Assembly (NCBI RefSeq): GCF_964213995.1
Contig: NC_135804.1
Span: 59,148,001 to 59,212,000, forward strand
Reading direction: 5' to 3'
Length of the DNA: 64,000 nucleotides
DNA from: Mustelus asterias
Lineage: Eukaryota
Of the stretch, positions 38,560 to 62,919 are shown in pieces. Within the stretch, counting starts at the first letter, position 1. Every line of letters begins with the position of its first letter. The translations under genes and the position numbers were made by a program. Under the pieces are notes generated by a model. The model saw only the letters and a program-made list of their open reading frames with translations, searched no databases and was not told the origin of the DNA.

Positions 38560-41176
38560 ATGACGAAAATGTTTTTTCTGTGCCTGATCCTCCAAGGGAT
38601 TAATCACACAGGTAGCAATTTATTCATTTCCCCAGTTGCTTAAATTGATAATTAGCTCTGAAGTATTTCTATGTCAATTTAGCGAACCTTATTTCCTCTG
38701 TCTAGATTATGTTGTGAGCCTTTCACTTTTATGTTGTATCCAATTCAATTGACGTGTGTTTGTCTTAATTTCTGACAGCTGCGGACCACACTTCGTTCAG
38801 TGTGTCTCAAGCACCAGAAGAAACGACTGTATCCAAAGGGGGAAACATCACCTTCTACTGCATATTCCCCATTTTTCAATCCCAAGCCTGGATACGGGTG
38901 TTATGGTGGAAACATGGTGAGAATGAATTCCTGCATTCAAGCCCAGACAAGAGAAAAAGGTTTGGTATGGAAAGTAAAGTGAACGGTTTCTTTCGCTTAC
39001 TAAATGTGACAGTGCAAGACTCTGGAATCTATCACTGTACGGTGATCCGTCAGGGAGTAGGTCGAGGAAATGGAACCGGATCACATCTAATTGTGCATGG
39101 TAAATGTCAAATATACTTGTCAAATATACACAGCATCTTTTGACTGTTTCACCGATCCATTTTTGTCAGTGTTAACATGATTAGTAACACAAGCAATAGT
39201 GCTCTCTCTATATAATTGTTATTTAGACATGCAATGCCACGCGCAGAGTACTGCGAAATGAATCAATATTATTGAATTTGACAACAACTATGAAGGCAAC
39301 CTATGCGCCAACTGAATGACCGTGAAAACTCACAGCAGTTTCCAAACATATAACTGAATGAAAATCATTTATAATAAAACGCATCATTCAATCAGTACAT
39401 TGATCTTGCTCATTTGAGACACGCACCACCCTGAACATCATTTATGTTAAAATTGATCTCCCAATAAGTACACCATTCTTGTTAACTTCAGATTCTTTTT
39501 CTGCCTCTATCCCTGTCCTGGCGACTTAATATTCCTGAAATCCTGAGATTTGGATGAGGTTCGTATACAATAGGTAGAAATTTAAAAAGTCAGGAGGCCG
39601 CGTTTTTGAATTGTACTATTATAAGAAAATGAAACGAATGTATATCAGAATCAAACTTAATTTATCCAAATCGAGCACATTACTCGACTTTGTTCATTCT
39701 GTGTTCCGCAGCGGCCCCAACCCCATTGAATCTTGTCTCCAGGGCATCTGAAGGGAATTTATCTGCGCCTTTGACTCTAGTCTGTGAAACGGCAGAGTTT
39801 TATCCGGAAAATTTCACGCTCACTTGGTATAAAAATGGACTCGAAACTACATTTGGAATACACACCAGTAAAGTGCAAAACAGAGAGGGACTATATGAAG
39901 TTTCCAGCTCTTTGGTTGAAACGCAGCCTGTCCCGAGCGACGCCAATTATACGTGTTTGGTATCTCATGTCTCCCTCAAGACTCCGGCGGTTGTCATCTA
40001 CACTCGTTCTAAATCTAGCCAAGGTACGACGACAGGAATCCAAAAAGGGATTAAATAATTATTGAATTCGTAAAGGGATATAATGGACAGTTTGCACATA
40101 AAGATACTCATGGCGATAGTTCACGACATTTCATGGGAAATATAAATGAAAATATTAGATTTAATTGAGTAATATACTTCAACCTAATGTTATGTTATAA
40201 CATCAGCTGCACACATGTTCTCAGTTAAGCCTTATTGTTGATAATTGCCACTATTGTATGTATAACGTATACTAGAACATACGAAATCGAAATCGGAGTT
40301 CATCATAGGGCCCGTCGAATCTGCGTGGCCATTCGATAAGATAATTACTGACTTTCTACATCAACTCTACTTTCCAGTCCGATCCCCTAACGATTGCAAC
40401 TTTGTATATACTCAGTGACTCAGCATTCACAGCCTTCTGAGGTACTGAATTCCTAAGATTTGAAACTCTTGAATGAAGAATTCTCTCCTAACCGCAGCCT
40501 GAGATGACCAAACCCTTATCTTGTGACTTTGATCCAAAGTACTAGAGTTCCAGCCAGAGATAGCAGTTTGCTGATCTAATTTATGGAAAGAAATACATTT
40601 TTTCCCGTTCTGTATTATAGTTCCTGGGAACACTATTAGATTAACCAATGAACTGTTCGTCAGCCTCTTTGCAAAACACTCGCCACTGTGTAACATATAT
40701 TTATGCTCTTATTAATTTTGCAGATTATGTCGGTATGTCCCTTTACTACTCGTGTTTCAGATACGTGGTGGGTGTATTGGCGCTTGTACTACTCCTGATC
40801 ATCACTAGGGCGCACTGCCAAATACCGATTAAGAATGGTAAGCGTTTGATTTTAATACAAAACGTCAGATACCGAGCGTCGAGAGAGTGAGAGTCAGTAC
40901 TACATGGAGAGAGGATTTTATTGAAGTCGGAATTTTCTATTCAGAGCAAACCACTGATTGCCCCAAACAGCTCGGCACAGCATCGTGGGCCGAAAGGCCT
41001 GTTCTGTGCTGTACTGTTCTATGTTCTATAGTGACCAATTCTTCACGTCAAAACACGGTAATTATTGTAAAACCATACCACAAATGGATCTGATTAACTG
41101 TATATCTGTCACTGACATTTTTCACTTTGCAGCAACTGCTGAATTAAATATGTCGTTTCGCACAGTTTCCAACTAG
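38560..41176 (+). CDS. V-C1 immunoglobulin-superfamily membrane receptor, gene 1 (NKp30-like VJ-type V + C1 + TM with Arg). Exons 38560-38611, 38779-39099, 39712-40023, 40724-40837, 41133-41176; 280 aa
   Basis: Leader MTKMFFLCLILQGINHT. V domain VSQ.P..ITFYC..VLWWK..QDSGIYHC..GNGTGSHLIV. C1 domain LTLVCETAEFYPENFTLTWYKNG..EGLYEVSSSL..YTCLVSHVSL. TM exon ..YYSCFRYVVGVLALVLLLIITR. Tail ATAELNMSFRTVSN*. All introns are GT-AG phase 1 and the exon lengths sum to 843 nt. Confidence 0.88.
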
Positions 41177-42388
41177 TCTGTAGTGAGACTGCAGTTAGTT
41201 TGTGTGGAGCCTTGTATCGTTCAGACCTGAAATGGTTGCAGGTCATTGCTGCCCTGCACAGGAGTTGGCATTTCGGACAGTCGCGAAATCTGAATTGGAA
41301 AAACATGTTCTATTTTGGTACCTTCTCGAGTAAGGAGTTTGCAACAATTGACAATCGAACTAAGTGAGTACTTTAAAAAACCTCCTCATGACTAAATTTC
41401 AGTCATTCACGTGGCAAAAGCGTAAGGAGGACAGCAGCGCTGCCAAGAACCTGCACGTTCATTTGCGCATCTCCGGAAAGGTTTGAAATGAGAAAATAAG
41501 GATTGCATAATGAGCAATTTATTTATTGTTGGAAGTATTTGTCTCGCAAGAAATACTTAACACCAGGAGCTCGGGAATGAAACTGTTTTTGCGAAAACAA
41601 AATCAGGCGTGGCGTTGATGGTTCGCTCTTGTCCCTTTCGCGAGATCGCAGAAGACCAATTTGTCCCCGCCATCCAGTGTTTACTGTTCTAAATAGATAC
41701 GGAGCAGAAAGCAAAACTGATGGTTTTGTTGAAATCTAAAGAGGTAATCATTTTTGTAGCTTTACCTATATTTGGAAAAAAAAGTTAGCGAATCTGTATT
41801 CAAGCAGAGCAGGAACTTTAAGGATTTCAGTAACTTGGTGTGGCGAGCGCTTTGACATTTTTTAATTTAAATTCTAATTATAAATTTTAATTATAATTAC
41901 GACTTGCAATAACCGGTATTCAGATTTGCAGTTATTTGAAATTATTCAGCATGGCTTCTGTGCTTTATCTCTAGCCATTCTGCTTAATGTTTCACCAGTA
42001 GTATGTAAAATGATGCAGGGAAGTGAAATAGGCATATTTAAATATTTTTCCGGTCCATGTAAGAAACACAGGTTGAAATCGCCAATATGTTGCAGCACAT
42101 TTAAGTAGAACCATGTACACTCCAAAACTTATAATTGAATCGGAGAGGCCCGTGCACCCTCAGGCGGTGCTGAGATCAGACCGACAGCGATTATCACAGG
42201 ACTATGTGTTACCATAATATTCCCGTGATAACGAATAATAAATACAAGGTTGGTTGTTTCCTGTCGTGTATTGCAGCTCCGGTTCTGTGCATTTTTTTCT
42301 TCCTCATGAATGATTTGTGTAGAAGCCAATAAAACTGGAAAGAACACCAATTAATAATCTTTCCAAACATTAATTTTCAGACCAAACA

Positions 42389-43069
42389 AGTTATCATCAT
42401 GGATAAGGTCAATAAAATATGTTATTAGAGCTTGCTTATTTCAATCAAGCATTATTATTTTTCGTGCGTAAAATTGCAAAACCTGGTTTTTGACCTGCGT
42501 GTTTCGTATTTTGACGTCTAGAGTTGATGTTTCTTTTGAAATGGAGTCTGCAATATATTTGCTGGCCCACAGAAGCCTCAGAACACAGGAGCCTTCGCGG
42601 GTTAGAACTGTCAAACTCCAAAAGAAAACAAATGAAGAAGATTAAATGTAACAAGTGAGAAAAGAGTAGCTTATGACATTATTATGTAACTGAATATAAA
42701 ATGTAAGTGTTTGCTTTTGCTTAACGATTTGTGGAAATTTATTTGCTTTTGCTTAACGATTTGTGGAAATTTACTTGAATTGCCTATAATAGTTATTTGA
42801 TTGCCTTGATTGCCTTGTGTAGTTTGACGAATCGGTGGCACTGAATGGATGAATACACTGACTGTTGAGTTATCATCATGTATAAGGTCAATAAAATATA
42901 TGTTATTAGATCTTGCTTATTTCAATCAAGCATTATTAATTTTCGTGCGTAAAATTGCAAAACCTGGTTTTTGATCTGCGTGTGTCGTATTTTGACGTCT
43001 AGAGTTGATGATTCTTTTGAAATGGACTCTGCAATATATTTGCTGGCCCACAGAAGCCTCAGAACACAG
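42389..43069. repeat. Direct repeat pair of about 200 bp (42389-42588 and 42868-43069) with an internal short tandem duplication (about 42710-42772)
   Basis: The two copies read nearly identically from agttatcatcat to agaagcctcagaacacag. tttgcttttgcttaacgatttgtggaaattta occurs twice between them. Confidence 0.9.
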
Positions 43070-43953
43070 TTTGCATCTGATAAAACAGGAGGTGCATTTC
43101 TCTAAGTTCCCTGTGACTATCCATTTCCATTCGATATGATACGTCCAGAAAATTACAGGTCACTGGCAAACGAAATACCTTAATTGTGCTTATTGGGGGT
43201 TGTCTTCAGAACGAAAGCAATTTTAAGAGCTTCTACGTCCAGCAATACTAATTTTAAAAATACTTTTCCAATTCAATCGAATCAAGTTGAGTCGGTGTAT
43301 AGTGCTGAGTATAGGTGTGAACAATAATCGTGCAGAGTTGAAAACCTTTTTCGTATTGGAGATTAAGTCCTATTTTAGTGTGGCTATATCATCAGATGAC
43401 AGAAAGCTCGTAATTATCGTGGTTGAACGATGAATTATTTAGGAAGTATCTCACTTAAATTGCAGAGTTGGAACATTGCGCAGTTAGTTATTGGAAGAAA
43501 CGCAGCCCATCGTTTCTAATGACACAAGTGTAACTCTGATTTTAGAGCTAATACAACGCAAAGTGATTGGGTGTTGTTCTCACTGTTTCTTTGACAACTG
43601 TTTGCGTTAACACACATTAGGATCCTAGAATTTTACAGTAAGAGATTCAGGCTGGGCTGTTCTTATAGTCTGTACTCTACAATGGCTCTGCATGAACCAT
43701 TCAGTTTCCAATCAAATAATTCATTTCGAAAAGGATTCTTGGCTGTGATTCTACATTTTGTGGCAAAGAGCATCTATTATTCCCGAACCAACTTCCCGGA
43801 AAGAATATTTTGTTTCGCATCCATCTTTATATTTCCAGATTATGTTAACGTTCTCCTCATGATGTGGAGATGCCGGCGTTGGACTGGGGTAAACACAATA
43901 AGAGTTTTAACAACACCAGGTTAAAATCCAACAGGTTTATGTGGTAGCAAATG

Positions 43954-43990
43954 CCATTAGCTTTCGGAGCGCTGCTCCTTCGTCAGATGG
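43954..43990 (-). ncRNA. Minimal type I hammerhead ribozyme
   Basis: Reverse complement reads ccat-CTGACGA-a-GGAGC agc GCTCC-GAAA-GCTA-atgg. Confidence 0.8.
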
Positions 43991-44128
43991 AGTGGAAATC
44001 TGCTCTCAAACAGGACACAGAGACACAAAATCAAGTTACAGAATACTGATTAGAATGATTAGATTCTAATCAGTATTCTGTAACTTGATTTTGTGTCTCT
44101 GTGCCCTGTTTGAGAGCAGATTTCCACT

Positions 44129-44165
44129 CCATCTGACGAAGGAGCAGCGCTCCGAAAGCTAATGA
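44129..44165 (+). ncRNA. Minimal type I hammerhead ribozyme
   Basis: ccat-CTGACGA-a-GGAGC agc GCTCC-GAAA-GCTA-atga. Confidence 0.75.
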
Positions 44166-45229
44166 CATTTGCTACCAAATAAACCTGTTGGACTTTAACC
44201 TGGTGTTGTTAAAACTCTTACAACATTCTCCTCAGCAGTGGAAATATTCCGCTACTATTCGCTTTTCATGACGCCTCAGAGGCTTGAAAACTTATCAAGT
44301 CACTGATCAATCCCTAGAGCGTCGGTGATGGGAATGGGGGCGGGGTAGGGGGGTGCACTGTTCCCACATAATTACATTCCATGTTTTGCCATTTGGATGG
44401 CCCCTTTTAATTTGTTCTTGCCATCTTCCACAATTTTATGCAAGTTCTTACATCTGCTGAATATTACTTCCGTGTCATTTTTCGCGATGCCTCCAAATAC
44501 TAAATCAAGGCCATTCCTTTTCACTTTTATTACGTGATAAGTTGACGTTGCCACCATTCATTCAGGTCACTCTGCCCTTTGGCACTATTACTATTCCTAC
44601 TATTTAAAATGCATTTAATGCTCTTATTTTACACGGCCAAACGCAGTATTTCCTCGTTCTCTGAATGCTGTATCAAGCAGCTCTCTGCCCTTGGAACAGC
44701 CAATGCCGTCTGCAGCATTTCATCATCTGTTCCAGAATTGCTTCAGAAACTCTCCATGATGTTTCAACTGCAGATTATGAAGACGCTGCCTCAATTTCCT
44801 GAAGAAGGTCATTGATCTTTGTAGTAAACAAAAGCAGTCAAGTACGGCATCTGTAATACATGTTTCGACACATCTTGTCATTCCGAGAAGCCTTATTTAT
44901 CCTTACATTTTACTTTGTCTCTTTCAACCATCTTCGTATCCGTTGGGCATATTGTTCTTGCTGCAATGTATCCATACCGTCATTGGTAATGGAAAATACA
45001 CATAAGCTGCATCTACTGCATTTCATTGATCTACTCCTTCTGTTATTTTACAGAGAATTTTGTAAGGCTTTGTATAAATTTGTGCTGACTAGGCTTGGTT
45101 AATTACGTTTCTTTATGAAATAAGTAGTTTACTGCTGGTGGACAGAGGCCTGGCGTGATGTAAATAAATGGGACAATGTTAACAGTCACTAAGCAAAATG
45201 CATTAAAAGTCAGGTCGACTTCTGAAATT

Positions 45230-47104: not shown

Positions 47105-47395
47105 GTAGAATCCCTACAGTGCAGGATGGGGCTATTCGGCTCAGCGACCCTGTACCGGCAACAATCCCACCCAAACCCTAACCCTGTTACCCCGTGCATT
47201 TAATCTGATAGCCTCCCTGACACTAAGTAGGAATTTAGCATGGCCAACTAATCTAATCTGCACATCTTTGGACTGTGGGAGGAAATTGGAGCACCTGGAG
47301 TGGACCCAAGCAGACTGCAACCCGAGGCCAGAATTGAACCCAGGTCCCTGGCACTGTGAGGCAGCAGTGCTAGTGATTGTGCCACCATGCTGTCC
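47105..47395 (-). mobile_element. HE1-type SINE
   Basis: Reverse complement of the tRNA head and V-domain, with a gattct tail. Confidence 0.8.
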
Positions 47396-49877: not shown

Positions 49878-52781
49878 TCAAGCTATCCCACTCCCTATCA
49901 TCCTGGTGTGCTCCATGTGCCTATCCAATAACCGCTTAAATGTTTCTAAAGTGTCTGACTCCACTATCACTGCAGGCAGTCCATTCCACACCCCAACCAC
50001 TCTCTGCGTAAAGAACCTACCTCTGATATCCGTCCTGTATCTCCCACCACGAACCCTATAGTTATGCCCCCTTGTAATAGCTCCATCCACCCGAGGAAAT
50101 AGTCTTTGAACGTTCACTCTATCTATCCCCTTCATCATTTTATACACCTCTATTAAGTCTCCCCTCAGCCTCCTCCGCTCCAGAGAGAACAGCCCTAGCT
50201 CCCTCAACCTTTCCTCATATGACCTACCCTCCAAACCAGGCAGCATCCTGGTAAATCTCCTCTGCACTCTTTCCAGCGCTTCCACATCCTTCTTATAGTG
50301 AGGTGACCAGAACTGCACACAATATTCCAAATGTGGTCTCACCAAGGTCCTGTACAGTTGCAGCATAACCCCACGGCTCTTAAACTCCAACCCCCTGTTA
50401 ATAAAAGCTAACACACTATAGGCCTTCTTCACAGCTCTATCCACTTGAGTGGCAACCTTTAGAGATCTGTGGATATGGACCCCAAGATCTCTCTGTTCCT
50501 CCACAGTCTTCAAAACCCTACCTTTGACCCTGTAATCCACATTTAAATTTGTCCTACCAAAATGAATCACCTCACATTTATCAGGGTTAAACTCCATTTG
50601 CCATTTTTCAGCCCAGCTTTGCATCCTATCTATGTCTCTTTGCAGCCTACAACAGCCCTCCACCTCATCCACTACTCCACCAATCTTGGTGTCATCAGCA
50701 AATTTACTGATCCACCCTTCAGCCCCCTCCTCTAAGTCATTAATAAAAATCACAAAGAGCAGAGGACCAAGCACTGATCCCTGCGGCACACCGCTAGCAA
50801 CCTGCCTCCAATCCGAAAATTTTCCATCGGCCACCACCCTCTGTCTTCGGTCAGACAGCCAGTTACCTATCCAATCGGCCAACTTTCCCTCTATCCCACA
50901 CCTCCTCACTTTCATCATAAGCCGACCATGGGGGACCTTATCAAACACCTTACTAAAATCCATGTATATGACATCAACTGCCCTACCTTCATCAACACAC
51001 TTAGTTACCTCCTCAAAAAATTCTATCAAATTTGTGAGGCACGATTTGCCCTTCACGAATCCGTGCTGACTATCTCGAATTAATCCGCATCTTTCTAAAT
51101 GGTCGTAAATCCCATCCCTAAGGACCCTTTCCATCAATTTACCAACCACCGAAGTAAGACTAACCGGTCTATAATTACCAGGGTCATTTCTATTCCCTTT
51201 CTTAAACAGAGGAACAACATTCGCCATTCTCCAGTCCTCTGGCACCATCCCCGTGGACAGCGAGGACCCAAAGATCAACGCCAAAGGCTCTGCAATCTCA
51301 TCCCTTGCCTCCCACAGAATCCTAGGATACATTTCATCAGGCCCAGGGGACTTATCGACCTTCAGTTTATTCAAAACTGCCAAGACATCCTCCCTCCGAA
51401 CATCTATTTCCTCCAGCCTATTAGCCTGTAACACCGTCTCTTCCTCAAAAACATGGCCCCTCTCCTTGGTGAACACTGAAGAAAAGTATTCATTCATCAC
51501 CTCGCCTATCTCTACTGACTCCATACACAAGTTCCCACTACTGTCCTTGACCGGCCCTAACCTCACCCTGGTCATTCTTTTATTCCTCACATAAGAGTAA
51601 AAAGCCTTGGGGTTTTCCTTGATCCGACCCGCCAAGGACTTCTCATGTCCCCTCCTAGCTCTCCTAAGCCCCTTTTTCAGCTCATTCCTTACTAACTTGT
51701 AACCCTCAATCGAGCCATCTGAACCTTGTTTCCTCATCCCTACATAAACTTCCCTCTTCCTTTTCACAAGACATTCCACCTCTTTTGTGAACCATGGTTC
51801 CCTCACTCGGCCATTTCCTCCCTGCCTGACAGGAACATACCTATCAAGGACATCCAGTATTTGTTCCTTGAAAAAGTTCCACTTTTCATTAGTTCCTTTC
51901 TCTGACAGTTTCTGTTCCCAACTTATGCCCCCTAATTCTTGCCTAATCGCATCATAATTACCCCTCCCCCAATTGTAAACCTTGCCCTGCCGTACGGCCC
52001 TATCCCTCTCCATTGCAATAACAAAAGACACCGAATTGTGGTCACTATCTCCAAATTGCTCTCCCACAACCAAATCTAACACTTGGCCTGGTTCATTTCC
52101 CCGTACCAAATCCAATGTGGCCTCACCTCTAGTCGGCCCATCCACATATTGTGTCAGGAAACCCTCCCGCACACACTGCACAAAAACTGCCCCATCCAAA
52201 CTATTTGACCTACAAAGGTTCCAATCAATATTTGGAAAGTTAAAGTCCCCCATGACAATTACCCTGTGACCCCCACACATATCCATAATCTGCTTAGCAA
52301 TTTCTTCCTCCACATCTCTATTACTATTTGGGGGCCTATAGTAAACTCCTAGCAACGTGACTGCTCCTTTCCTATTTCTAACTTCAGCCCATATTACCTC
52401 AGTGTGCAGATCCCCCACGAAGTGCCTTTCCGCAGCCGTTAAACTATCCTTGATTAACAATGCCACTCCTCCACCTCTTTTACCAGCTTCCCTACACTTA
52501 GTGAAACATCTATACCCCGGAACGTCCAACAACCATTCCTGTCCTTGTTCTACCCATGTCTCCGTAATGGCCACAACATCGTAGTCCCAAGTACCAATCC
52601 ACGCCCCAAGTTCATCTACCTTGTTCCGGATGCTCCTTGCATTGAAGTAGACACACTTCAACCCACCTTCCTGTCTACCAGTACCCACCCTTGACCCTGA
52701 TACCTCCCCCAATACCTCACCACCCTCACTGACTTCTGGACTACAACTCCCTTTCCCACTCCCCTGACAAATTAGTTTAAA
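49878..52781 (-). CDS. CR1 ORF2: APE endonuclease + reverse transcriptase (open from 52892, no ATG upstream of the endonuclease)
   Basis: YFNARS, AITETW, YYRPP, GDFN and SDH endonuclease motifs; [24 protein letters not shown] and FADDTK RT motifs; no stops over 1004 codons. Confidence 0.93.
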   Translation of the reverse strand, partial: FKLICQGSGKGSCSPEVSEGGEVLGEVSGSRVGTGRQEGGLKCVYFNARSIRNKVDELGAWIGTWDYDVVAITETWVEQGQEWLLDVPGYRCFTKCREAGKRGGGVALLIKDSLTAAERHFVGDLHTEVIWAEVRNRKGAVTLLGVYYRPPNSNRDVEEEIAKQIMDMCGGHRVIVMGDFNFPNIDWNLCRSNSLDGAVFVQCVREGFLTQYVDGPTRGEATLDLVRGNEPGQVLDLVVGEQFGDSDHNSVSFVIAMERDRAVRQGKVYNWGRGNYDAIRQELGGISWEQKLSEKGTNEKWNFFKEQILDVLDRYVPVRQGGNGRVREPWFTKEVECLVKRKREVYVGMRKQGSDGSIEGYKLVRNELKKGLRRARRGHEKSLAGRIKENPKAFYSYVRNKRMTRVRLGPVKDSSGNLCMESVEIGEVMNEYFSSVFTKERGHVFEEETVLQANRLEEIDVRREDVLAVLNKLKVDKSPGPDEMYPRILWEARDEIAEPLALIFGSSLSTGMVPEDWRMANVVPLFKKGNRNDPGNYRPVSLTSVVGKLMERVLRDGIYDHLERCGLIRDSQHGFVKGKSCLTNLIEFFEEVTKCVDEGRAVDVIYMDFSKVFDKVPHGRLMMKVRRCGIEGKLADWIGNWLSDRRQRVVADGKFSDWRQVASGVPQGSVLGPLLFVIFINDLEEGAEGWISKFADDTKIGGVVDEVEGCCRLQRDIDRMQSWAEKWQMEFNPDKCEVIHFGRTNLNVDYRVKGRVLKTVEEQRDLGVHIHRSLKVATQVDRAVKKAYSVLAFINRGLEFKSRGVMLQLYRTLVRPHLEYCVQFWSPHYKKDVEALERVQRRFTRMLPGLEGRSYEERLRELGLFSLERRRLRGDLIEVYKMMKGIDRVNVQRLFPRVDGAITRGHNYRVRGGRYRTDIRGRFFTQRVVGVWNGLPAVIVESDTLETFKRLLDRHMEHTRMIGSGIA

Positions 52782-53698
52782 CCCCCCTGAAGAGCCGTAA
52801 CAAATTTCCCTCCGAGGATATTGGTGCCCCTCTGGTTCAGGTGCACCCCATCCTGTTTGTACAGGTCCCACCTTCCCCAGAACGTGTTCCAATTATCCAC
52901 GTATCTGAAACCCTCCCTCCTACACCATCCCTGCAACCACATATTTAACTGCACTCTCTCCCTGTTCCTCAACTCGCTATCACGTGGTACCGGCAACGTA
53001 CCAGAGATGACCACATGTTTCGTCTTGGCTCTCAGCTTCCAGCCCAGCTCCAGAAATTCCTGCTTTAAATCCCCGTCCCTTCTCTTACCTATGTCATTGG
53101 TACCAATGTGCACCACGACTTGTGACTGTTTCCCCTCCCCCTTCAGAATCTGGAAAACACGGTCTGAGACATCACGGACCTTGGCATCCGGTAGGCAACA
53201 TACCATCCGTGAGTCTCTTTTGCTGCCACAGAACCTCCTATCTATCCCTCTAACTAACGAGTCCCCAATAACTATCGCCCTCCCGCTCTCCCCCTTTCCC
53301 TCCCGAGCCACAGAGACGGACACAGTGCTGGAGATCCTCTCACTGCGGCTCCCCACTGGTATGTCATCCCCCTCAACCGTATCCAAAGCGGAATACTTGT
53401 TGCTAAGGGGAACGACCACCGGGGATCCCTGCACGGACTGCTTCCTCCCAGCCCCTCTCACCGTCACCCATCTGTTTTCAATCCTCGGAGTAACTGTATT
53501 CCTAAAGCTTGTGTCTATGGCCATCTCTGCGTCCCTGATGATCCTAAGTTCATCCAACTCCAGCTCCAGTTCCCTAACACGGTTTTGGAGGAGCTGCAGA
53601 TGGGTGCACTTCCCACAGGTGTAATCAGTAGGGACACTGTCGTCGTCCCTCACCTCAAACATAGTGCAAGAGGAACATTGCACTGCCTGCACACCCAT
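52772..53698 (-). CDS. CR1 ORF1: zinc finger/leucine zipper + SGNH esterase
   Basis: CSSC..CGKC zinc finger, LQNRVRELELEL coiled coil, IGDS, HIGTND and DGVH esterase motifs. Confidence 0.92.
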   Translation of the reverse strand: MGVQAVQCSSCTMFEVRDDDSVPTDYTCGKCTHLQLLQNRVRELELELDELRIIRDAEMAIDTSFRNTVTPRIENRWVTVRGAGRKQSVQGSPVVVPLSNKYSALDTVEGDDIPVGSRSERISSTVSVSVAREGKGESGRAIVIGDSLVRGIDRRFCGSKRDSRMVCCLPDAKVRDVSDRVFQILKGEGKQSQVVVHIGTNDIGKRRDGDLKQEFLELGWKLRAKTKHVVISGTLPVPRDSELRNRERVQLNMWLQGWCRREGFRYVDNWNTFWGRWDLYKQDGVHLNQRGTNILGGKFVTALQGGLN

Positions 53699-53891
53699 CC
53701 CCTCTAGATACCTTGCCAGTACCAGGTAGAAAGTGCAAAAATGAATTCAACTCACCCCTGCTCGCCCTTTCAGCCTAAGCCCTGTGAGCCAAAGTCTTAT
53801 AGCTCACACTCTGCTTCCCACACACTCCACTGCCCGCTCCCGACGCTTCCCGATGTATACTGCAGCCTATCTTTTATACTTCACGCGCTTA

Positions 53892-54540: not shown

Positions 54541-57500
54541 TCCTTATTACTTTGGTGTCAATTCATTTCATAACGGTTCAATGAAGTGCCCTAGAAAACG
54601 GAGTGCCATTTTGCTCTGAGTGCTTGGGAGTTAAGGTGAGAGTGGGAGATTAGAAGAATTTGAAGAGAATTAACCTTAAATCTTGTTCGCAATGCTAACA
54701 CAAATGTTTGATATTTTTCCTCGACTGCATATTGCTGGATTAGAAAGTACTTTAGATCTAAAAAAGGTAGAAACAAGGACCCTTAGTGGACTAGCCAGAT
54801 GATTAATTTAGGGCAGATATTAAACCAGTTTAGACTGTTCTTTTGCGAACGGGAAGGCAGAGACTATAAAAACTAAATACCCGATGCCCTCGCACGGAGT
54901 GCCATTTTGCTCTGTGTGCTTGCAAGTTAAGGTGAGTGTGGGAGTTCAGGAAAGTGCAGGAGGGAGTATTGTTGCCTTGTTTCTCTTTACTGTACACACG
55001 TCAGTGAGGGCAGTTGCAGGCCAAGGTAGGAGGAGTGAACATGGGCGGTGAGTCTTTCTCTCTTATTCCTTTCTGACTTCGGAAGTGAAGGCTGGGTAGG
55101 GAAACAGAAATTGTGGAAAGTAAAAATTCGTGGTACAAAAATTAAAGCAAAGGGTATGGAGTTATTTGATTTATTTCCTTTTTTAAGACTTCTAACGTTT
55201 TGAAACTTAAAAGGATTTAGTGATGATGACCGCAGAGCTCGAAGCCGTGGTCTGGTCTTCTTGCTCCATGTGGAAGGCCGGGCAAATTACCCGTGCCGGG
55301 GACCAACGTGTGTGCAGAAGGTGTGTCCAGGTGCAGCTCCTGGAAGCCCGAGCGTCCGAGCTGGAACAGCGGCTGGGGACTCTGTGCATCATCCACGAGT
55401 CTGAGAGCACTGTGGATAGCACGTTTAGAGATATGTTCACACTACAGCTGAAGGCAGCAGGGGAACGGCTGACCCACGGGCAGTCCAAGAGCAACAAACG
55501 GGTAGTTCAGGAGTCTTCTGGGGTCTCGCTCGCAAATCGGTACTCCATTTTGGAGGCTAATGAGGGCGCTGGTTCCTCCAGGGAGTGCGTACGGACCCAA
55601 GCTTCTGGCACCACATGCAGCCTGTCTGTCCTGGGGGTGGGGTGGGGAGAAGCAGGGCATTAGTAATAGGGGATTCTATAGTCAGAGTAACAGATAGGCG
55701 CTACTGTGGCCGTCAACATGACTCCAGGATGGCGTGTTGCCTCCTTGGTGCTAGGGTCTGGGAGGCCACTGAACTGCTGCAAGGCATCCTGAAAGTGAGT
55801 GTGATAAGACAGAAGTCATGGTGCATGTTCGTGCTAATGACATCGTTCAAAAGTTCGAAAGAAGGATGAGGTCTTGCATCAAGCATTAGAGGCTAGGCAG
55901 TGGAATAAAAGGCACGATCTCTTGTTGAGTGATCTCTGGGTTATTCCCAGTGTCACGTGGTAGCGAACACAGAAATAGGAGAATACCGCAGGTGAATGCG
56001 TGGCTTAAGATTTAGTGCAGGAAAGAAGGTTTTAGATTTCTGGATTACTGGGACGAGTTCAGGGAAATGTGAGATGTGTACAAGCGGGATGGTCTACAGC
56101 TGAACCAGGGCAGGACTCATGTCCTTGCGGGACATTTTGCTTGTGCTGTTGGGAGGAGTTTTAACTAATTTGGCAGGAGCAGGGGACACAGACTATGAGC
56201 GGAATAGGGTCACCGCATAATACAATAAGACAATCAAGTCAGAGGGAGAACAGCTTTACCAAGTTTCAAGGGAGTAAGGCAAGGCTGGATGGCCTCTACG
56301 TTAATACCAGGAGTGTTGCAGGTAAAGCAAATGAATTAAGGACGAGGATTGACATGTGGAATTGTAATAATAACCATCGCAAAGATACGGTTGGGAGAGG
56401 GTCAGTACTGGCAATTCAACATCCCGGGATATAGAAACTTCAGGCAAGACAGAGGAGTGGGAAAGAGAGGAGCAAGCATTGAATTATTAGTTAAGGAGTC
56501 AGTTGCTGCAGTAAGGAGAGTTGCTATCTTCGAAGGGGCATTGAATGAAGCTTTGTGGGTAGAACTTAGGAATAAAAAATAAAGCCACATTGCTAGGTGT
56601 TTATTATAAACCCCAAAGAGTCAGTTGGAATTTGAGGGGCTAATATGTGTACAATATGCAAAGGCCTGTGAAAATAATAACAGTAGGATAATTATAATAG
56701 GTGATTTCAACTTTCCCAACATTAACTGGATAAACATAATGTTAAGGATTTGACTGGAGTAGATATTTTGAAATGCGTGGAGGAGAACTTTAGGCCAATA
56801 TGTAGAGCGTCCGACAAGGGAAGGAGCTGTGCTGGGCCTAATTCTGGAGAATGAAGCCGAACAAGTGGTTGAGCTGGTAGTGTGGGATCATTTTAGTGGT
56901 AGCGACCAGATCATGGTATGATTTAAGCTTGTTATGGACAAAGAAATATACAACTTCCCAAAAAGGTTTTGGATTGGGCAGAGCGGAGTTTAAGAAATGA
57001 GACAGGATCTTGCTAAGGCAATCTACGAACAGCTACAATTGGGGAAATCTACAGAAGAACAATGGGGGTGTTCAAATAGGAAATAGAGGGGGTACAAGCC
57101 CAGCATGTTCCAAGTAGGGTGATGGGAAAGAGTAACAATCCCAGAGAACCATGGATGACCAGATATATTCAAGGCAAGATGCAAAGGAAAAGAAAAGCTT
57201 TTAGCAGTTACAAGGAGACCAAATCAGCAGAGTCATTAGTGAAATACAGAACATGCAGGGCAGACTGTAAGAAAGCAATTTGAAATGCTAAAAGGGGACA
57301 TAAGAGAGCTCTGGCTTGTAAAAGTAGGGAAAAACCCAACGTATTCTATAAATATATCAATGGGAAGAGGTTAACCAGGGAAAGAGTAGGGTCCATTAGG
57401 GAGCAAGGGGCCAGTCTGTAGGTGGAGTGAGACAGTATTCAACGAATGCTTCACATCTGCCTTCACCAAGAGAATGAGGATGAAGGTATGGAGCTCAGAA

Positions 57501-57688
57501 GGAGGGACTGTGAGGTTCTTGAGCAAATTGACATAGGGAAGGATAAGGTACTGGAAGTATTGGCAAGCTTAAATGTGGACAAATCGCCAGGTCCAGGTGA
57601 ATTGTGTCCCAGGCTTCTGTGGCAGGCAAGAGAGGAGACTGCAGGGTTCTGACCCAATTTTTAATTTCTCTCTGGCCACAGAGGAGGT

Positions 57689-57826
57689 AAACACAGTCAG
57701 AGTTTTAACAACACGAGGTTAAAGTCCAACAGGTTTATTTGGTATCAAATAATCCTGTTGGACTTTAACTGGTGTTGTTAAAACTCTTACTGTGTTTACC
57801 CCAGTCCAACGCCGGCATCTCCACAT
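57689..57826. mobile_element. Short palindromic PLE pLTR insertion, 12-bp TSD
   Basis: TSD cacagaggaggt at 57677-57688 and 57827-57838. Confidence 0.85.
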
Positions 57827-58739
57827 CACAGAGGAGGTGCCAGAGAACTGGAGAACCTTGAATGTGGTTCCGCTATTTAAGAAGGATTGTAGAGGAAAGC
57901 CACGTAAGTACAGACCAGTGAGTCACAGGTCAATCATAGGGAAATTATTGGAGAAAATTCTGAATGAGAGCATCCACCTCTCATTTAGCGAAGCAAGTTC
58001 GATTAAGGATAGCCAGCATGGCTTTGTCAGAGGGAGGTCATGCCTACCAAAGTTGATCGAATTTTTTGAGGAGCTGACTAAGTTCACCTCCTCAAATGTA
58101 GTTTATATGTATTTCAGCAAAGCCTTTTTCAAGGTCCCACATGGGAGACTTATAAAGAAATTAAATGGAATACAGGATACATTGATAAAATGGATTCAAA
58201 ATTGGCTCAATTGAGGGAGACAGAGCGTGATGACACTTGATGATGGCTGCGTTAGTGACTGGGAGCCAGAGTCCAGTGGTGAACTGTGCTGGGTCCCCTA
58301 TTATTCATCATTTATATAAACAGCATAGGTAACTGTGGGAGGTAGGATTAATAAGTTTGTGGATGGCACAAAAAATGGCCGGATACTTAACAGTGAGGTA
58401 GAGTGTCTTGGGCTGCAAGGAGATAGAGATGGGATAATCACATGGGTAGATATGTAGCAGATTGAATTTAACCCTGAAAAATGTGAGGTGATACACTTTG
58501 GAAGGAATAATTGGACAAGAAGCACTCAATGAATGGCATGACACTAGGGAGTTCTGTGAAACTAAGGGACCATTGGGTCTTTGTCCAGAGATCTCTGAAA
58601 CCGCAAGCACATGTCAGTACATTGTTGAAAAAGTAATTGGGACACTTGCATTTATCAATCGAGGCGGAGCTTACAAAAGCAGGGAAGTCATGTTGGAGTT
58701 GTATATAACTTTAGTGAGGCCATAGCAAGAGTGCTGTGT

Positions 58740-59400
58740 GGTGAAGAAGGCATTCAGCATGCTTGGTTTCATCGGTCAGAACATTGAATACAGGAGTTGG
58801 GACGTCTTGTTGACGTTATACAAGACATCGGTAAGGCCACACTTGGAATACTGTGTGCAATTCTGGTCATTGAAAGGATATTATTAAACTAGAAAGAGTA
58901 CAGAAAAGATTTACTAGGATGCTATCGGGACTTGATGGATTGAGTTATAAGGAGAGGCTGAATAGACTGGGACTTTTTTCTCTGGAGCGTAGGAGGCTGA
59001 GGGGTGACCTTATAGAAGTCTATAAAATAATGAGGGGCATAGATAAGGTAGATAGTCAATATACCTTCCCAAAGGTAGGGGAGTCTAAAACTAGAGGGCA
59101 TAGGTTTAAGGTGAGAGGGGAGAGATACAAAAGTGTCCAGAGGGGCAATTTTTTCACACAGAGGGTGGTGAGTGTCTGGAATAAGCTGCCAGAGGTAGTA
59201 GTGGAGGCGGGTACAATTTTATCCTTTAAAAAGCATTTAGGTAGTTACATGGGTACGATGGGTATAGAGGGATGTGGGCCAAATGCGGGCAATTGGAATT
59301 AGCTTAGGGGTTTAAAAAAAAAGGGCAGCATGGACAAGTTGGGCCGAAGGGCCTGTTTCCATGCTGTAAACCTCTATGACTCTATGACTATGACTCTATG
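58740..59400 (+). mobile_element. Younger 5'-truncated CR1 nested in the older CR1
   Basis: ORF 58919-59302 and a (ctatga)n tail. The host CR1 resumes at 59401 (aattctggtcgccac). Confidence 0.85.
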
Positions 59401-60103
59401 AATTCTGGTCGCCACATTCTTGGAAGGCTGTAGTTGCTTTGGAGTGGGTGCAAAGGAGATTCACCAGGGTGCTACCTGGGATGGAACATTTAAGTTATGA
59501 AGAAAGGTTGGATAGACGTGGATTGTTTTTGTTGGAGCAGAGAAGACTGGACGGGGGAGAGGGGTGCACCTGATCGAGGTGTGTACGATTATGAGGGGCA
59601 TAGTCAGAGTGGATAAGGAGCAGCTCTTCCCCTTAGTTGAAGGGTTAGTTATGAGGGAGCATAAATTCAAGGTGAGGGACAGGAGGTTTATGGGGGACGT
59701 GAGGAAAATCCTTTCACCCAGAGTGCGGTGACGGTTTGGAATGCACTGCCTGGTAGCGTGGCAGAGGCGGGTTACCTCATAAAATGCGCCTGGATGAGCA
59801 CTTGGAACGCCATGACATTCAAGGCTACGGGTCAAGTGCTGATAAATGGGATTAGATGGGAAGTCAGGTATTTCACACGTGTTGTTGCAGACTCGATGGA
59901 CCGAAGGGCATCTTCTGCGCTGTATGATTCGATGTTATCGCGTCAAGGGGGTGGGTAAAAAAGCAAGCTGATGTTGTAAATCATCCTTTTTGAAACTCAG
60001 TTTTTTTTAACCCTCATTTTTAGTTGATCGTGCTGCAGGTGATTCCAAAAGCTGCCGGACGGTCACAAACGAAACGTATTTTTGAACAAGCGTAAAACAG
60101 GAT

Positions 60104-60120
60104 GTCAAACGTCATTGCGA
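60104..60120 (+). promoter_or_regulatory. Conserved proximal promoter motif (gene 2), next to an ETS-like acaggatgt
   Basis: Paralogous to 38455-38471. Confidence 0.5.
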
Positions 60121-60211
60121 TGGTTTTCAGATCAAATATTCAGCAGACAATTCACACAGTGATAAACACACGGTCACTCCTGTCAGACATCAACTGAACC
60201 TTTATCACAGA

Positions 60212-62919
60212 ATGTTGTCCAATCTGATCCTTCTGTTAACGTCCCTGTCTCTCCTGAAGATCATTTCAACAGGTATTGGGATATTATCTACCCCAACTGT
60301 CTTATTAAAGAAATAAATATTTCATTGTTCCCAAGTCGATAGAATTAAAGGCAGTTCGTCCTTCAAAACCTCTTCTGCATTTCCATGCAGAAACATGTTC
60401 TAAGCTCTCTCCTTTCGCATTGAATACAGTTAATTAATACAAACTTTAAATATACTTTCTAACAGGTGCTCCAGGAACTTCGATCAGAGTGTCTCAAAGT
60501 CCTAAACAGTTAACTATATTGAGGGGGACAAACATCACCTTCTACTGCATAATCCCCCTTTCTCATGACAATGTGGATGTCGAGGTGCTTTGGTGGAAAC
60601 AGGGTGAGAATAAATATATGACAATAGGAACCGATGACAGAAAACGATTCGATTTCAAAATTAAAGGAGGTGGTTCATTTGAGCTGCGAAACGCGACTCT
60701 CCAGGACTCAGGAATCTATCACTGCGCAGTGATCCGTCAGGGAAAAAATAGTGGAAATGGAACAGGATCAAATTTAATCGTCTGCGGTAAGTGACTGAAA
60801 TGGCCGGGAACATCAAGCACGCTGTTTTGCCATTATTTTATTGTGCTGCCTTTGATATTGTAAAGCTCTGTGCACAACTGCTAATTACGCAGCGGAGTGT
60901 GACATTTTATTTGCTGTGTTATTCCAAACTGCTGGAAATACTCAGCAATTCAGGGCATGTCTGCGAAGAGAGAGGCAAAGTTAAAGTCTCAGGTCTATCA
61001 ACTTTTTGAGTAATGAGGATATAATCCGTCTCTTATTCCTTACTCTGAACATTTCTCCACCAACCTGACTTTCCCCATGTTCTGTTCGCAGCTACACCAA
61101 CTCCGTTAAAGATTTTCGCTAAGCATCCCGCAAGCAATTCAACTACGTTCCTGACTCTTGTGTGTCAGACGGCTGGATTTTACCCGGGTGATTTGACCCT
61201 CCTTTGGTATAAAAATGGCGTCAACATCACAACGGTGGGAAATCCGATCAAACACCAGAACGCAGAAGGACTGTATGAAGTTTCCAGCTCTTTTGAAGAG
61301 CCGCACTTTGTGCGGAACGAAGCAGTTTACATCTGTTTGGTAACTCACATCTCCCTCCGGACTCCCGCCATTGCCATTCACACTGTTACCAACTCCTGCT
61401 CAGGTATGTGGCCAACAGGCCAAGAAGTGAAGTTAGCAGTTTTTAAAAATCAGAGAAAGGTATTGACATCACTAATCATGAAGATAGTTTTAAAATAAAA
61501 TACCGGTAAATTTAAAATTAAAGAGAAAATTGAATAATTCTATGTAAAATGTTATTGGCCCAACCCTTTTGTCAAAACGAAGTAATATCATTGTTGTTCT
61601 CCTGCCTATTGAAGCTCGGCAGGTTCCAAATTTTTAAAAAGAAAAAGTTGCAGGCGGGCTACATCTTCTGTCCATTTATTTTACATATCATGCTTATTAT
61701 TAAACACTCGCACTTGGCCATTTCTCATCCTGATTTTATATTTTCTATTACCAGTTTTCCTCACACGAGCTGCAGAACCAGAAGTGACAGTTTGTTTGGT
61801 TTGCCCAACTGTGAATGGGTCAGAAGTTAGTACTGTGAGCAGGCAGCAATGCCTCTCCATGATCTAGCGGTTAGGAGTAAAAACGCTGTTTTGTAATATT
61901 TCATTTCGCTTGCAGCCCAGGTCTGCAGTATAACTGATTGCGATTCATCTGTTTATTAATTAGCAAGTTCTGTTATTAACAAATAACCTCCCTCCGTACT
62001 GCTTCTTACTTCAGTTGACATGCTACACAAGATTCAATTTGCATATTAAGGGACTGAATAATGTCCATATTTCTCTTAGCAGTGGCGAGTTTCGTTTCAT
62101 TGAATTACGAATATTTTATTAAATAAGAGAAAACGACAAGTCAAGTGCAAGAACAAGTCTATTGATCCATCGAAATGTACTCGAATGGAATGTTTTGAGC
62201 GCCCCAAACTGGTACTCTCCCTCGCAGGTTATTCTGGTGTTGTGAGAATAAATTAGTTGGACATCAATTCAGTATGGTAAATTCCGAATAATTTGAAGTA
62301 ATGTTTTAAAGTTTATTTATTAGTCACAAGTAAGGCTTACATTAACACTGCAATTAAGTTACTATGAAATTCCCCTCGTCGCCACAGTCCGGCGCCTGTT
62401 CGGGTCAATGCACCTAACCAGCACGTCTTTCAGACTGTGGGAGGAAACTGGAGCACCCAGAGGAAACCCACGCAGACATGGGAAGAAAGTGCAAACTTCA
62501 CACAGACAGTGACCCAAGCCTGGAATCGAACTCGGGTCACTGGCGCTGTAAAGCTGCAGTGCTACTGTGCCGCCCCGATGCTCTGCTCTGATCATATTAC
62601 CCAGTTGCAGAAAACATGAGCACTAGTTTAACCAACAAATTAGGTAAAAGCAAATTACTGCGAATGCTGGAATCTGAAAGAAAAACGGCAAATGCTGGGA
62701 AATCTCAGCGGGCCTGAAAGCAGCTGTGATGAGACAATATTAATTCGAGGATTTTTTTTAGGTAGCGACCGAAATGAATTAGAACTCAGCATGATTTCAA
62801 TTTTGCAGAGTCTGATGGCAAGTATCAGTACATTTGGATTTCTGGATGTACGGTGGGTGGATTGGCTTTTCTGATATTCATGGTCATAATTGGGACGAGA
62901 GTCTGTCTGAAGAATACAG
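60212..62919 (+). CDS. V-C1 immunoglobulin-superfamily receptor, gene 2. Exons 60212-60272, 60466-60786, 61092-61403, 62809-62919; cytoplasmic exon uncertain (candidate 63156-63184)
   Basis: Leader MLSNLILLLTSLSLLKIIST. The V exon (321 nt) and C1 exon (312 nt) have the same lengths as in gene 1. TM exon ESDGKYQYIWISGCTVGGLAFLIFMVIIGTRVCLKNT. All introns are GT-AG phase 1. Confidence 0.85.
62308..62577 (-). mobile_element. tRNA-derived V-SINE in gene 2 intron 3
   Basis: B-box-like gagttcgattcc on the minus strand and V-domain; same tail type as 32222-32515. Confidence 0.8.

What the first reader, a model, noticed from the sequence alone, without database searches (positions are those of the whole stretch)
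38560..62919. Cluster of non-rearranging VJ-C1 receptors: antigen-receptor architecture without RAG rearrangement
Seen: two paralogous genes with L / V / C1 / TM / tail exons in phase 1. Each V exon already encodes a J-like G strand (GNGTGSHLIV, GNGTGSNLIV) and splices straight to a C1 domain (FYP, WYKNG, YxCLVxH). I found no RSS next to either V. Established: C1 domains are largely restricted to Ig, TCR, MHC, tapasin, SIRP and B7-H6. NKp30 has a VJ-type V ending GxGT-like and a TM Arg but no C1. Inference: this is an expanded shark family joining an NKp30-like V to a single C1, the layout expected of a pre-RAG antigen-receptor relative. Automated annotation would probably call it Ig light chain-like or SIRP-like.
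Basis: partly seen in the sequence, partly recalled or inferred. Interest (0 to 1): 0.85.

Follow-up and report, generated by a model that had tools for sequence, protein, structure and literature searches.

The report
Shark non-rearranging V-C1 paired receptor genes
Two intact neighbouring shark genes encode membrane receptors with an antigen-receptor-like V(J) domain and one C1 domain that need no gene rearrangement; they belong to a large cartilaginous-fish receptor family that databases label SIRP-like and that I found described in no paper I could search.

Summary
Two paralogous + strand genes (38560-41176 and 60212-62919) each have leader, V, C1 and stalk/TM exons, all in phase 1. The J-like G strand lies inside the V exon and no RSS flanks it.

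They are not orphans. An exhaustive profile search found a large family, and every single-V relative whose name I looked up is chondrichthyan (sharks, rays, chimaera). RefSeq labels them variously: SIRP-alpha-like, SIRP-beta-1-like, tapasin-related-like, Ig lambda-like or NCR3LG1-like.

- **Family make-up:** it holds ITIM-tailed members and short-tailed members with a conserved TM arginine, that is, paired inhibitory and activating-type receptors. Gene 1 is the Arg/short-tail type. Gene 2 has a neutral TM and its tail lies outside the window.
- **V domain:** closest by fold to shark VNAR and human NKp30, and by profile comparison to Xenopus NCR3.
- **C1 domain:** a generic, bona fide C1 (UrIg2, MHC II beta and Ig kappa are nearest).
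- **V-C1 unit:** scores about equally against Ig light chains and SIRP-alpha.

The V(J)-C1 non-rearranging idea is already published for SIRP, UrIg, UrIg2 and PRARP, so this is a variant of a known kind. No RNA data were available. First readers of this scan noted similar genes elsewhere in this genome (unchecked).

The parts
38560..38611 (+). Gene 1 leader exon (ATG, 17 codons plus 1 base; split leader)
   Evidence: Read and translated. Similar leaders occur in P0162 and P0041.
38779..39099 (+). Gene 1 V(J) exon: end of the leader, a V-set domain and a built-in J-like G strand (GNGTGSHLIV)
   Evidence: Pfam V-set E 5.4e-09. AF2 pLDDT 93. 86% identity to Mustelus P0001. No RSS.
39712..40023 (+). 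Gene 1 C1-set exon
   Evidence: Pfam C1-set E 5.4e-12. AF2 pLDDT 88.9. Foldseek top hit is shark UrIg2, TMq 0.85.
40724..40837 (+). Gene 1 stalk/transmembrane exon, with a membrane-proximal Cys and an Arg in the N-terminal part of the TM
   Evidence: The same R-x-x-[V/M]-G context occurs in P0002, P0007 and P0054 and in P0164. Part of the DNA contigs carry a 1-base insertion after 40744 that makes a stop codon.
41133..41176 (+). Possible gene 1 tail exon (14 codons, then a stop). Prediction only.
   Evidence: AG acceptor and phase-1 frame read. No homologue or RNA support. Read-through of the TM exon donor would also give a short tail without a motif.
60212..60272 (+). Gene 2 leader exon (ATG, 20 codons plus 1 base)
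   Evidence: Similar to the leader of Scyliorhinus P0164.
60466..60786 (+). Gene 2 V(J) exon (GNGTGSNLIV)
   Evidence: Pfam V-set E 4e-10. 79% identity to P0164.
61092..61403 (+). Gene 2 C1-set exon
   Evidence: Pfam C1-set E 2.7e-09. 74% identity to P0164.
62809..62919 (+). Gene 2 stalk/transmembrane exon, with a stalk Cys and a neutral TM (Gly where gene 1 and P0164 have Arg). The tail lies beyond this exon and was not found before 64000.
   Evidence: tblastn matches to the TM regions of P0164, P0039 and P0027. Tail search.

Best explanation
These are two old paralogues of a multigene family found across cartilaginous fish. The family encodes germline-encoded (non-rearranging) type I membrane receptors. 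Their ectodomain is one VJ-type V domain, short and NKp30/VNAR-like with no C'' strand, followed by one C1-set domain, then a Cys-bearing stalk and a TM segment.

The family works as a paired innate immune receptor system of the SIRP-alpha/SIRP-beta or NKp30 type. Some members have long tails with several ITIM/ITSM-like tyrosine motifs (inhibitory). Others have short tails and a conserved Arg in the TM.

Gene 1 is of the Arg/short-tail kind. I infer that it signals through an ITAM adaptor with an acidic TM residue. Gene 2 has a neutral TM. Its tail lies outside the window, so it may be inhibitory or signal-less.

Shown: gene structure, domain types, absence of RSS, family membership, taxonomic spread, purifying selection. 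Inferred: expression, signalling partners, ligand, dimerisation through the stalk Cys and C1.
For: - **Structure and domains:**
- **Family size:** the V profile search of 1.84 billion representatives gave 451 hits at E<=1e-3 and 122 at E<=1e-10. Of the 150 listed, 82 are single-V proteins under 520 aa. Of these 82, 60 have a C1, 75 have GxG[TS] at the end of V, and 29 have ITIM/ITSM-like motifs in the tail.
- **Taxa:** 24 of 30 names looked up are chondrichthyan, and these are all the single-V ones. The 6 others are multi-V proteins of reptiles (5) and Xenopus NCR3 (1). All 11 hits and 23 of 25 hits are chondrichthyan.
- **Orthologue groups:** the V and C1 trees agree. Gene 1 groups with Mustelus P0001, Scyliorhinus P0002, Heptranchias P0162 (in the C1 tree only; it was not a row of the V tree) and the ray Hypanus P0007. 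Gene 2 groups with Scyliorhinus P0164, Chiloscyllium P0005 and Heterodontus P0003.
- **Splice junctions:** the junction residues I predict match the RefSeq models.
- **TM Arg:** it sits in the same context in P0002, P0007, P0054 and P0164.
- **Selection:** dN/dS between the two genes is 0.45 (V) and 0.43 (C1).
- **SIRP paired-receptor logic:** review PMC12975943, passages.
Against: - No RNA run of this organism was offered. The three runs that hold the stretch are DNA contigs, so splicing and expression of these two genes are unproven.
- Part of the contigs carry a 1-base insertion that puts a stop at the start of the gene 1 TM exon. One haplotype may therefore encode a truncated or null product.
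- No ITIM tail exon lies in the window, so the 'pair' is inferred from relatives.
- The nearest relative of gene 2 (P0164) has the TM Arg that gene 2 lacks.
- No adaptor, ligand or cell type was tested.
Confidence: 0.72

Rival explanations
1. They are simply the cartilaginous-fish orthologues of the SIRP family (SIRP-alpha, -beta, -gamma). One C1 domain was lost or never duplicated.
For: RefSeq names most relatives SHPS-1/SIRP-alpha-like or SIRP-beta-1-like. The full-length family profile aligns colinearly with SIRP-alpha V plus d2 (65.2 bits). In that alignment the J-like motif sits on the SIRP GAGTELSV stretch, and d3 scores 48.8 bits. Relatives carry tails with three or four YxxL/I/V motifs. 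The inhibitory/activating pairing matches the SIRP logic.
Against: There is one C1, not two. The V fold is nearer NKp30 and VNAR than SIRP-alpha, which ranks 46. Ig lambda and kappa V-C units score slightly higher than SIRP-alpha (71.0 and 70.8 bits). No bony-vertebrate SIRP appeared in any of the three word-indexed searches or among the 30 names looked up. The only neighbour gene trace in the window is an APLP2-like exon, which as I recall is not a SIRP-locus marker. The tail motifs are short and recur in unrelated inhibitory receptors.
Confidence: 0.25
2. They are members of the NCR3 (NKp30) family that carry, or have kept, a C1 domain. On this view NKp30 of other vertebrates is the C1-less form.
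For: Human NKp30 structures rank 3, 4, 7 and 25 in the Foldseek list, at 23-24% identity. Xenopus NCR3 P0149 is a significant hit of the V profile (E 1e-08; named). hhalign of the V alignment against Xenopus NCR3 P0187 gives probability 97%, E 7e-11 and 30% identity; BLASTP gives 32% over the whole V. Both share the VSQxPE start and the GNGT G-strand motif. Gene 1 has a TM Arg. RefSeq models include C1-less forms: P0071 against P0072 has 245 of 248 aligned residues identical and one 94-residue gap.
Against: By sequence profile against solved structures, NKp30 is not among the 60 rows shown; VNAR, TCR and CD79b score highest as single domains. The Foldseek E-values span only 1.5e-08 to 1e-06 across the top 50. 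No RefSeq relative is named NCR3-like. First readers of this scan placed V-only NKp30-like genes on other pieces of this genome (unchecked). I could not read the shark NCR3 paper (Kinlein 2021).
Confidence: 0.25
3. They are germline-joined immunoglobulin light-chain genes or decayed copies of them.
For: Ig lambda and kappa V-C units are the best two-domain matches among solved structures (71.0 and 70.8 bits). Some relatives are named Ig lambda-1 light chain-like.
Against: Both genes have a conserved stalk/TM exon, and relatives have signalling tails. The V lacks the C'' region. All near relatives are family members, not Ig chains. The frames are intact and dN/dS is about 0.44.
Confidence: 0.02
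4. One or both genes are unexpressed or dying copies in a fast birth-and-death cluster, with no function of their own.
For: The cluster sits among LINEs. A stop-creating insertion allele exists in the gene 1 TM exon. Gene 2 lost the TM Arg that its nearest relative keeps. There is no RNA evidence.
Against: All eight core exons are open and have consensus splice sites. dN/dS is below 0.5. Each gene has its own relatives in other orders of sharks.
Confidence: 0.12

Closest known systems
SIRP family (SIRP-alpha, -beta, -gamma; SHPS-1)
   Same: A non-rearranging V domain with a J-like G strand, followed by C1-set domain(s). Type I membrane protein. Paired inhibitory (multi-ITIM tail) and activating (basic TM residue, short tail) forms. 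Colinear V-C1 alignment of 65.2 bits. RefSeq uses this label.
   Different: One C1 instead of two. The V fold is nearer NKp30 and VNAR. The basic residue is an Arg near the outer end of the TM. No orthology or CD47 binding was shown. No bony-vertebrate SIRP was retrieved.
NKp30 (NCR3)
   Same: A short VJ-type V domain with a GNGT-type G strand. Best non-VNAR fold match. hhalign probability 97% to Xenopus NCR3. TM Arg in gene 1. The family has both ITIM and charged-TM forms.
   Different: NKp30 has no C domain. MHC linkage could not be shown here. Human NKp30 is not among the top sequence hits.
UrIg and UrIg2 (elasmobranch non-rearranging VJ-C1 genes)
   Same: A single-exon VJ with a split leader, C1-set domains and no RSS. 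The UrIg2 structure is the top C1 match by sequence and by fold.
   Different: UrIg and UrIg2 have several C domains; nurse shark UrIg2 has nine and epaulette shark UrIg2 eleven (PMC12227049, section 7). They are single genes linked to the MHC or to the Ig/TCR complex. The genes here have one C1, belong to a large family and have signalling-type TM regions and tails.
Immunoglobulin light chains (including germline-joined shark IgL)
   Same: V(J)-C1 order. Highest two-domain profile scores (71.0 and 70.8 bits).
   Different: These genes have a TM exon, signalling tails in relatives, a short V without C'', and no RSS or separate J segment.
PRARP (chicken non-rearranging VJ genes, Fu et al. 2019) and amphioxus IgVJ-C2
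   Same: Tightly linked non-rearranging VJ-type IgSF genes proposed as relics of an antigen-receptor precursor. PRARP is cited in PMC10751288 and PMC11599192. Amphioxus IgVJ-C2 is among the best single-domain V hits (23.8 and 27.9 bits).
   Different: I had no PRARP sequence and could not read the paper, so nothing was tested. Amphioxus IgVJ-C2 has a C2 domain, not a C1.

Membership tests
SIRP family | N-terminal V-set domain with a J-like motif, not rearranged | tested here: met
   The motif aligns on the SIRP-alpha J-like stretch.
SIRP family | Two membrane-proximal C1-set domains (V-C1-C1) | tested here: not met
   One C1 exon per gene. 60 of the 82 single-V relatives have a C1. One skate model (P0030) has a duplicated C1.
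SIRP family | Paired forms: ITIM tail, or basic TM residue with a short tail | tested here: met
   Gene 1 has a TM Arg and a short predicted tail. ITIM-like tails occur in 29 of 82 relatives. No ITIM exon lies in the window.
SIRP family | Orthology: nests with bony-vertebrate SIRPs and shares locus synteny | tested here: inconclusive
   No SIRP reference sequence could be fetched.
SIRP family | Binds CD47 and recruits SHP-1/2 or DAP12 | not testable with these tools
   Needs experiments.
NKp30 / NCR3 | VJ-type V domain of the NKp30 kind | tested here: met
   Foldseek ranks 3, 4, 7 and 25. hhalign probability 97% and 30% identity to Xenopus NCR3. The margin over other V domains is small.
NKp30 / NCR3 | Single Ig domain ectodomain (no C domain) | tested here: not met
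   A C1 exon is present in both genes. C1-less models exist among relatives.
NKp30 / NCR3 | Arg in the TM for ITAM adaptor pairing | tested here: met
   Met in gene 1 only. Gene 2 has Gly at that place. Adaptor pairing was not tested.
NKp30 / NCR3 | MHC linkage (shark NCR3) and a B7H6 ligand | not testable with these tools
   The window holds no MHC gene. The scan's notes put MHC genes on other pieces (unchecked).
UrIg / UrIg2 | Single-exon VJ with a split leader and no RSS | tested here: met
   The feature is described in PMC12227049, section 7.
UrIg / UrIg2 | Several C1-type domains; a single gene in the MHC or the Ig/TCR complex | tested here: not met
   One C1; a multigene family.
Rearranging antigen receptors (Ig, TCR) | V segment flanked by RSS, with separate J (and D) segments | tested here: not met
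   The J-like strand lies inside the V exon, which splices directly to C1. No RSS-like site sits next to V.
Germline-joined IgL | Secreted V-C chain without a TM exon | tested here: not met
   A conserved stalk/TM exon is present in both genes and in relatives.
PRARP | Sequence relationship to chicken PRARP genes | not tested
   No PRARP sequence or paper was available. It is known to me only from citations.

The most novel reading that the evidence does not exclude
The family is neither SIRP nor NKp30. It would be a third, chondrichthyan-retained lineage of VJ-C1 receptors descended from the same pre-RAG stock.

On this reading its chains pair through the C1 domains and the stalk cysteine into TCR-like dimers. 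An example would be the Arg-TM chain of gene 1 with the neutral chain of gene 2. Such dimers would signal through CD3/FcR-gamma-type adaptors. That would make them a living, non-rearranging model of what the receptor looked like before the RAG transposon split a V exon.

The C1-less splice forms would then show how NKp30-type receptors arose.
Probability: 0.08. Interest if true: 0.9.

Novelty: new variant of a known kind. Interest (0 to 1): 0.5.

Why it matters
C1-set domains and VJ-type V domains are the hallmarks of the antigen-receptor/MHC system. Each non-rearranging gene that joins the two helps triangulate what the RAG transposon invaded.

The current discussion of that question in sharks centres on UrIg, UrIg2 and NCR3 (PMC12227049, PMC10751288). 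In the main text of PMC12227049 the words SIRP and 'signal regulatory' do not occur.

This family is large, spans all cartilaginous fish, joins an NKp30-like V to a C1, and has activating and inhibitory forms. It is therefore an extra, easily testable data point for V and C1 phylogenies and for synteny with MHC paralogous regions.

It is also a likely major innate (NK or myeloid) receptor system of sharks that exists so far only under inconsistent automatic names.

It does not by itself change the picture. The V-C1 argument was made for SIRP in 2009.

Tried and rejected
- **RNA evidence.** The look-up of sequencing runs offered three runs, none on record as RNA. Read laying (901 letters, gene 1 and downstream) showed contigs running through introns, so these are DNA. 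The only joints were at repeats (41.0 kb to 43.9 kb and around 44 kb). Splicing could not be tested.
- **Reference sequences for trees.** The three homologous-protein searches returned almost only chondrichthyan proteins and no SIRP, Ig or TCR reference. They were P0016, the family alignment A5 at E<=10, and the tail region of P0162, residues 225-335 (only four Heptranchias paralogues among 287 candidates). Only within-family trees were made, from rows I picked by hand: 75 and 62 stored proteins plus the two window exons. Multi-V proteins and some fragments were left out. No row was dropped for gaps.
- **Protein Atlas**. It gave only generic C1-set and V-set clusters.
- **Sequence searches of solved structures with V**. 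The lists are crowded by PD-L1 duplicates or multi-domain I-set proteins. NKp30 and SIRP are not in the 60 rows shown, so their rank by sequence is unknown.
- **Gene 2 tail.** There is no DNA similarity beyond the V and C1 exons, and no convincing phase-1 exon before 64000.
- **More APLP2 exons.** A motif scan found none.
- **Rejected readings.** Germline-joined IgL is rejected because of the TM exons. Rearranging V is rejected because there is no RSS and the J-like strand is inside the exon.
- **Papers not held.** Kinlein 2021 shark NCR3, Flajnik 2012 B7/NKp30, UrIg 2023 and Ohta and Flajnik 2015. What I say of them is recalled or taken from citations. Kinlein 2021 may describe part of this family.
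- **Supplements.** I asked for none. Figures S1 and S2 and table S1 of PMC12227049, and the gene lists of PMC10751288, may bear on novelty.
- **Literature searches for a description of this family.** Searches found none.

Full report
**What is there.** The window is 64 kb without N and is dominated by retrotransposons. On the + strand lie two genes with the same layout.

| Exon | Gene 1 | Gene 2 |
|---|---|---|
| Leader | 38560-38611 | 60212-60272 |
| V | 38779-39099 | 60466-60786 |
| C1 | 39712-40023 | 61092-61403 |
| Stalk/TM | 40724-40837 | 62809-62919 |
| Tail | possibly 41133-41176 | not found |

All borders are AG/GT and all junctions are phase 1. The leader is split, as in antigen-receptor genes (PMC12227049, section 7). 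Pfam calls the exons V-set (E 5.4e-09 and 4e-10) and C1-set (E 5.4e-12 and 2.7e-09). Each V exon ends in a J-like G strand and splices straight to C1. An RSS scan found nothing beside or inside either V exon. CR1-like LINEs lie between the genes: an intact one at 49878-53698 on the - strand and a decayed one around 55220-59302 on the + strand. The window holds exactly two copies.

**Are the genes alive?**
- All eight core exons are open.
- The paralogues share 55% (V) and 50% (C1) identity. DNA similarity survives only in these two exons. dN/dS is 0.45 and 0.43.
- Together these point to an old duplication under purifying selection.
- The junction residues I predict are the ones found in RefSeq models of relatives.
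- No RNA run was offered, and the three runs that hold the stretch are DNA contigs.

**The family.** I searched 1.84 billion representative proteins with a profile of the two V exons.
- It gave 451 hits at E<=1e-3 and 122 at E<=1e-10.
- Of the 150 listed, 82 are single-V proteins under 520 aa. Of these, 60 have a C1, 75 have GxG[TS] at the end of V, and 29 have ITIM/ITSM-like tail motifs.
- I looked up 30 names. The 24 single-V ones are all chondrichthyan: Mustelus, Scyliorhinus, Heterodontus, Chiloscyllium, Heptranchias, Hypanus, Hemitrygon, Mobula and Callorhinchus.
- add Amblyraja, Leucoraja and Carcharodon.
- The six others are multi-V proteins of reptiles and Xenopus NCR3.
- RefSeq names are inconsistent. 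Most are SHPS-1/SIRP-alpha-like. Others are SIRP-beta-1-like, tapasin-related-like, Ig lambda-1 light chain-like, MHC class II beta-like, NCR3LG1-like or uncharacterized.

**Orthologue groups.** The within-family V and C1 trees agree (quick IQ-TREE; short alignments, so many forks are open).
- Gene 1 sits with Mustelus P0001 (86% V and 79% C1 identity), Scyliorhinus P0002, Heptranchias P0162 (C1 tree only; it was not a row of the V tree) and the ray Hypanus P0007. A starred set of 7 rows holds it in the V tree.
- Gene 2 sits with Scyliorhinus P0164 (79% and 74%), Chiloscyllium P0005 and Heterodontus P0003.
- The two genes are therefore old paralogues, each with relatives in other orders.

**Signalling parts.**
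- Relatives fall into long-tailed forms with three or four YxxL/I/V motifs and short-tailed forms.
- Gene 1 has an Arg in the outer part of its TM. P0002, P0007, P0054 and P0164 have it in the same R-x-x-[V/M]-G context. Its predicted tail is short and has no motif.
- Gene 2 has Gly at that place, as does the ITIM-tailed P0027. Its tail is not in the window.
- Both stalks carry a Cys next to the membrane.
- This is the logic of paired receptors such as SIRP-alpha and SIRP-beta (PMC12975943, passages). That gene 1 uses an ITAM adaptor is inference.

**What the domains resemble.**
- *V fold.* The AF2 model of the gene 1 V exon is confident (pLDDT 93). It has only a short C' and no C'' strand.
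- *V by Foldseek.* Shark VNARs and human NKp30 rank first (3noi at ranks 3 and 4, 6yjp at 7, 3pv6 at 25; 23-24% identity). SIRP-alpha V is at rank 46. E-values span only 1.5e-08 to 1e-06.
- *V against Xenopus NCR3.* P0149 is a significant hit of the V profile (E 1e-08). hhalign against P0187 gives probability 97%, E 7e-11 and 30% identity. BLASTP gives 32% over the whole domain. Both share the VSQxPE start and the GNGT motif.
- *V by sequence against solved structures.* It is about equally far from VNAR, TCR, CD79b, PD-L1 and amphioxus IgVJ-C2.
- *C1.* The model (pLDDT 88.9) matches shark UrIg2 best (TMq 0.85), then MHC II beta-2, Ig kappa C and beta-2-microglobulin. Sequence search agrees.
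- *V-C1 unit.* A profile of 25 full-length relatives scores as follows:

| Solved V-C unit | Bits |
|---|---|
| Ig lambda | 71.0 |
| Ig kappa | 70.8 |
| SIRP-alpha V plus d2 (d3 a further 48.8) | 65.2 |
| UrIg2 V plus C1 | 56.9 |

**Reading.** The genes are real, do not rearrange, and are antigen-receptor-like in both domains. They belong to a pan-chondrichthyan family that works like SIRP or NKp30 paired receptors.
- I do not file them as SIRP. There is one C1, the V is nearer NKp30, and orthology is untested.
- I do not file them as NKp30, because a C1 is present.
- RefSeq models include C1-less forms. P0071 against P0072 has 245 of 248 aligned residues identical with one 94-residue gap. The two architectures may therefore be one splice step apart.

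**What is known.**
- The V-C1 argument for a link to antigen-receptor origins was made for SIRP-alpha (PMC2785349, passages).
- NKp30, PRARP, UrIg and UrIg2 are discussed as VJ or VJ-C1 relics (PMC10751288, passages; PMC12227049, section 7 and passages; PMC11599192, passage).
- My searches found no paper on this shark family.
- Four key papers, including the shark NCR3 paper, are not held. I saw no supplements.

**Context.**
- An APLP2-like exon lies on the - strand at 18085-18192 (46.6 bits to APLP2 against 38.5 to APP). I found no other APLP2 exon.
- First readers of this scan noted further VJ-C1 genes on the same piece, one with an ITIM tail about 355 kb upstream. They placed V-only NKp30-like genes and MHC genes on other pieces. 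These notes are unchecked.

**Verdict.** This is a variant of a known kind, of moderate interest.

Noticed in passing
window 18085-18192, - strand: A lone exon of an APP-family gene (E1 domain). It is closest to APLP2 (46.6 bits, against 38.5 for APP). A motif scan found no other exon of that gene in the window. The receptor genes may lie beside or inside a very large APLP2 gene, which gives a synteny marker.
   Followed up: partly
window 40744 (gene 1 TM exon); also 40715 and 40726: Part of the DNA contigs of two runs from one sample carry an extra A after 40744 (depth 13 of 37 and 9 of 18.3). By my reading of the frame this creates a TAA stop at the start of the TM exon. It is a possible heterozygous truncating allele, or a collapsed paralogue.
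   Followed up: partly
window 62404-62514; also 36051-35977, 27645-27571, 32343-32444: The last ~35 residues of the Scyliorhinus RefSeq model P0015 match a repeated element that occurs several times in the window, once inside the C1-TM intron of gene 2. That isoform's tail is probably an exonised or mis-called SINE-like repeat.
   Followed up: no
window 49878-53698 (- strand) and about 55220-59302 (+ strand): Two LINEs lie between the two receptor genes. One is an apparently intact CR1-like LINE (ORF1 of 308 aa and ORF2 of 1004 aa with endonuclease and RT). The other is a decayed copy in the opposite orientation.
   Followed up: no
stored proteins P0071/P0072 and P0070/P0086: These are pairs of models that differ by one internal gap of 93-94 residues, exactly the C1 domain. 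The family therefore includes NKp30-like V-TM forms, probably by skipping the C1 exon.
   Followed up: partly
stored protein P0030 (Amblyraja radiata): This skate family member has two nearly identical C1 domains in tandem (V-C1-C1-TM-ITIM tail). A recent internal duplication gives it the SIRP-like three-domain layout.
   Followed up: no
stored proteins P0161, P0095, P0026, P0037, P0090, P0121, P0083: A subgroup of short-tailed family members ends its TM with an acidic residue followed by His ([V/M/F][D/E]H: VDH, MDH, VEH or FDH) instead of carrying an Arg. This may be a second kind of charged-TM partner chain.
   Followed up: no
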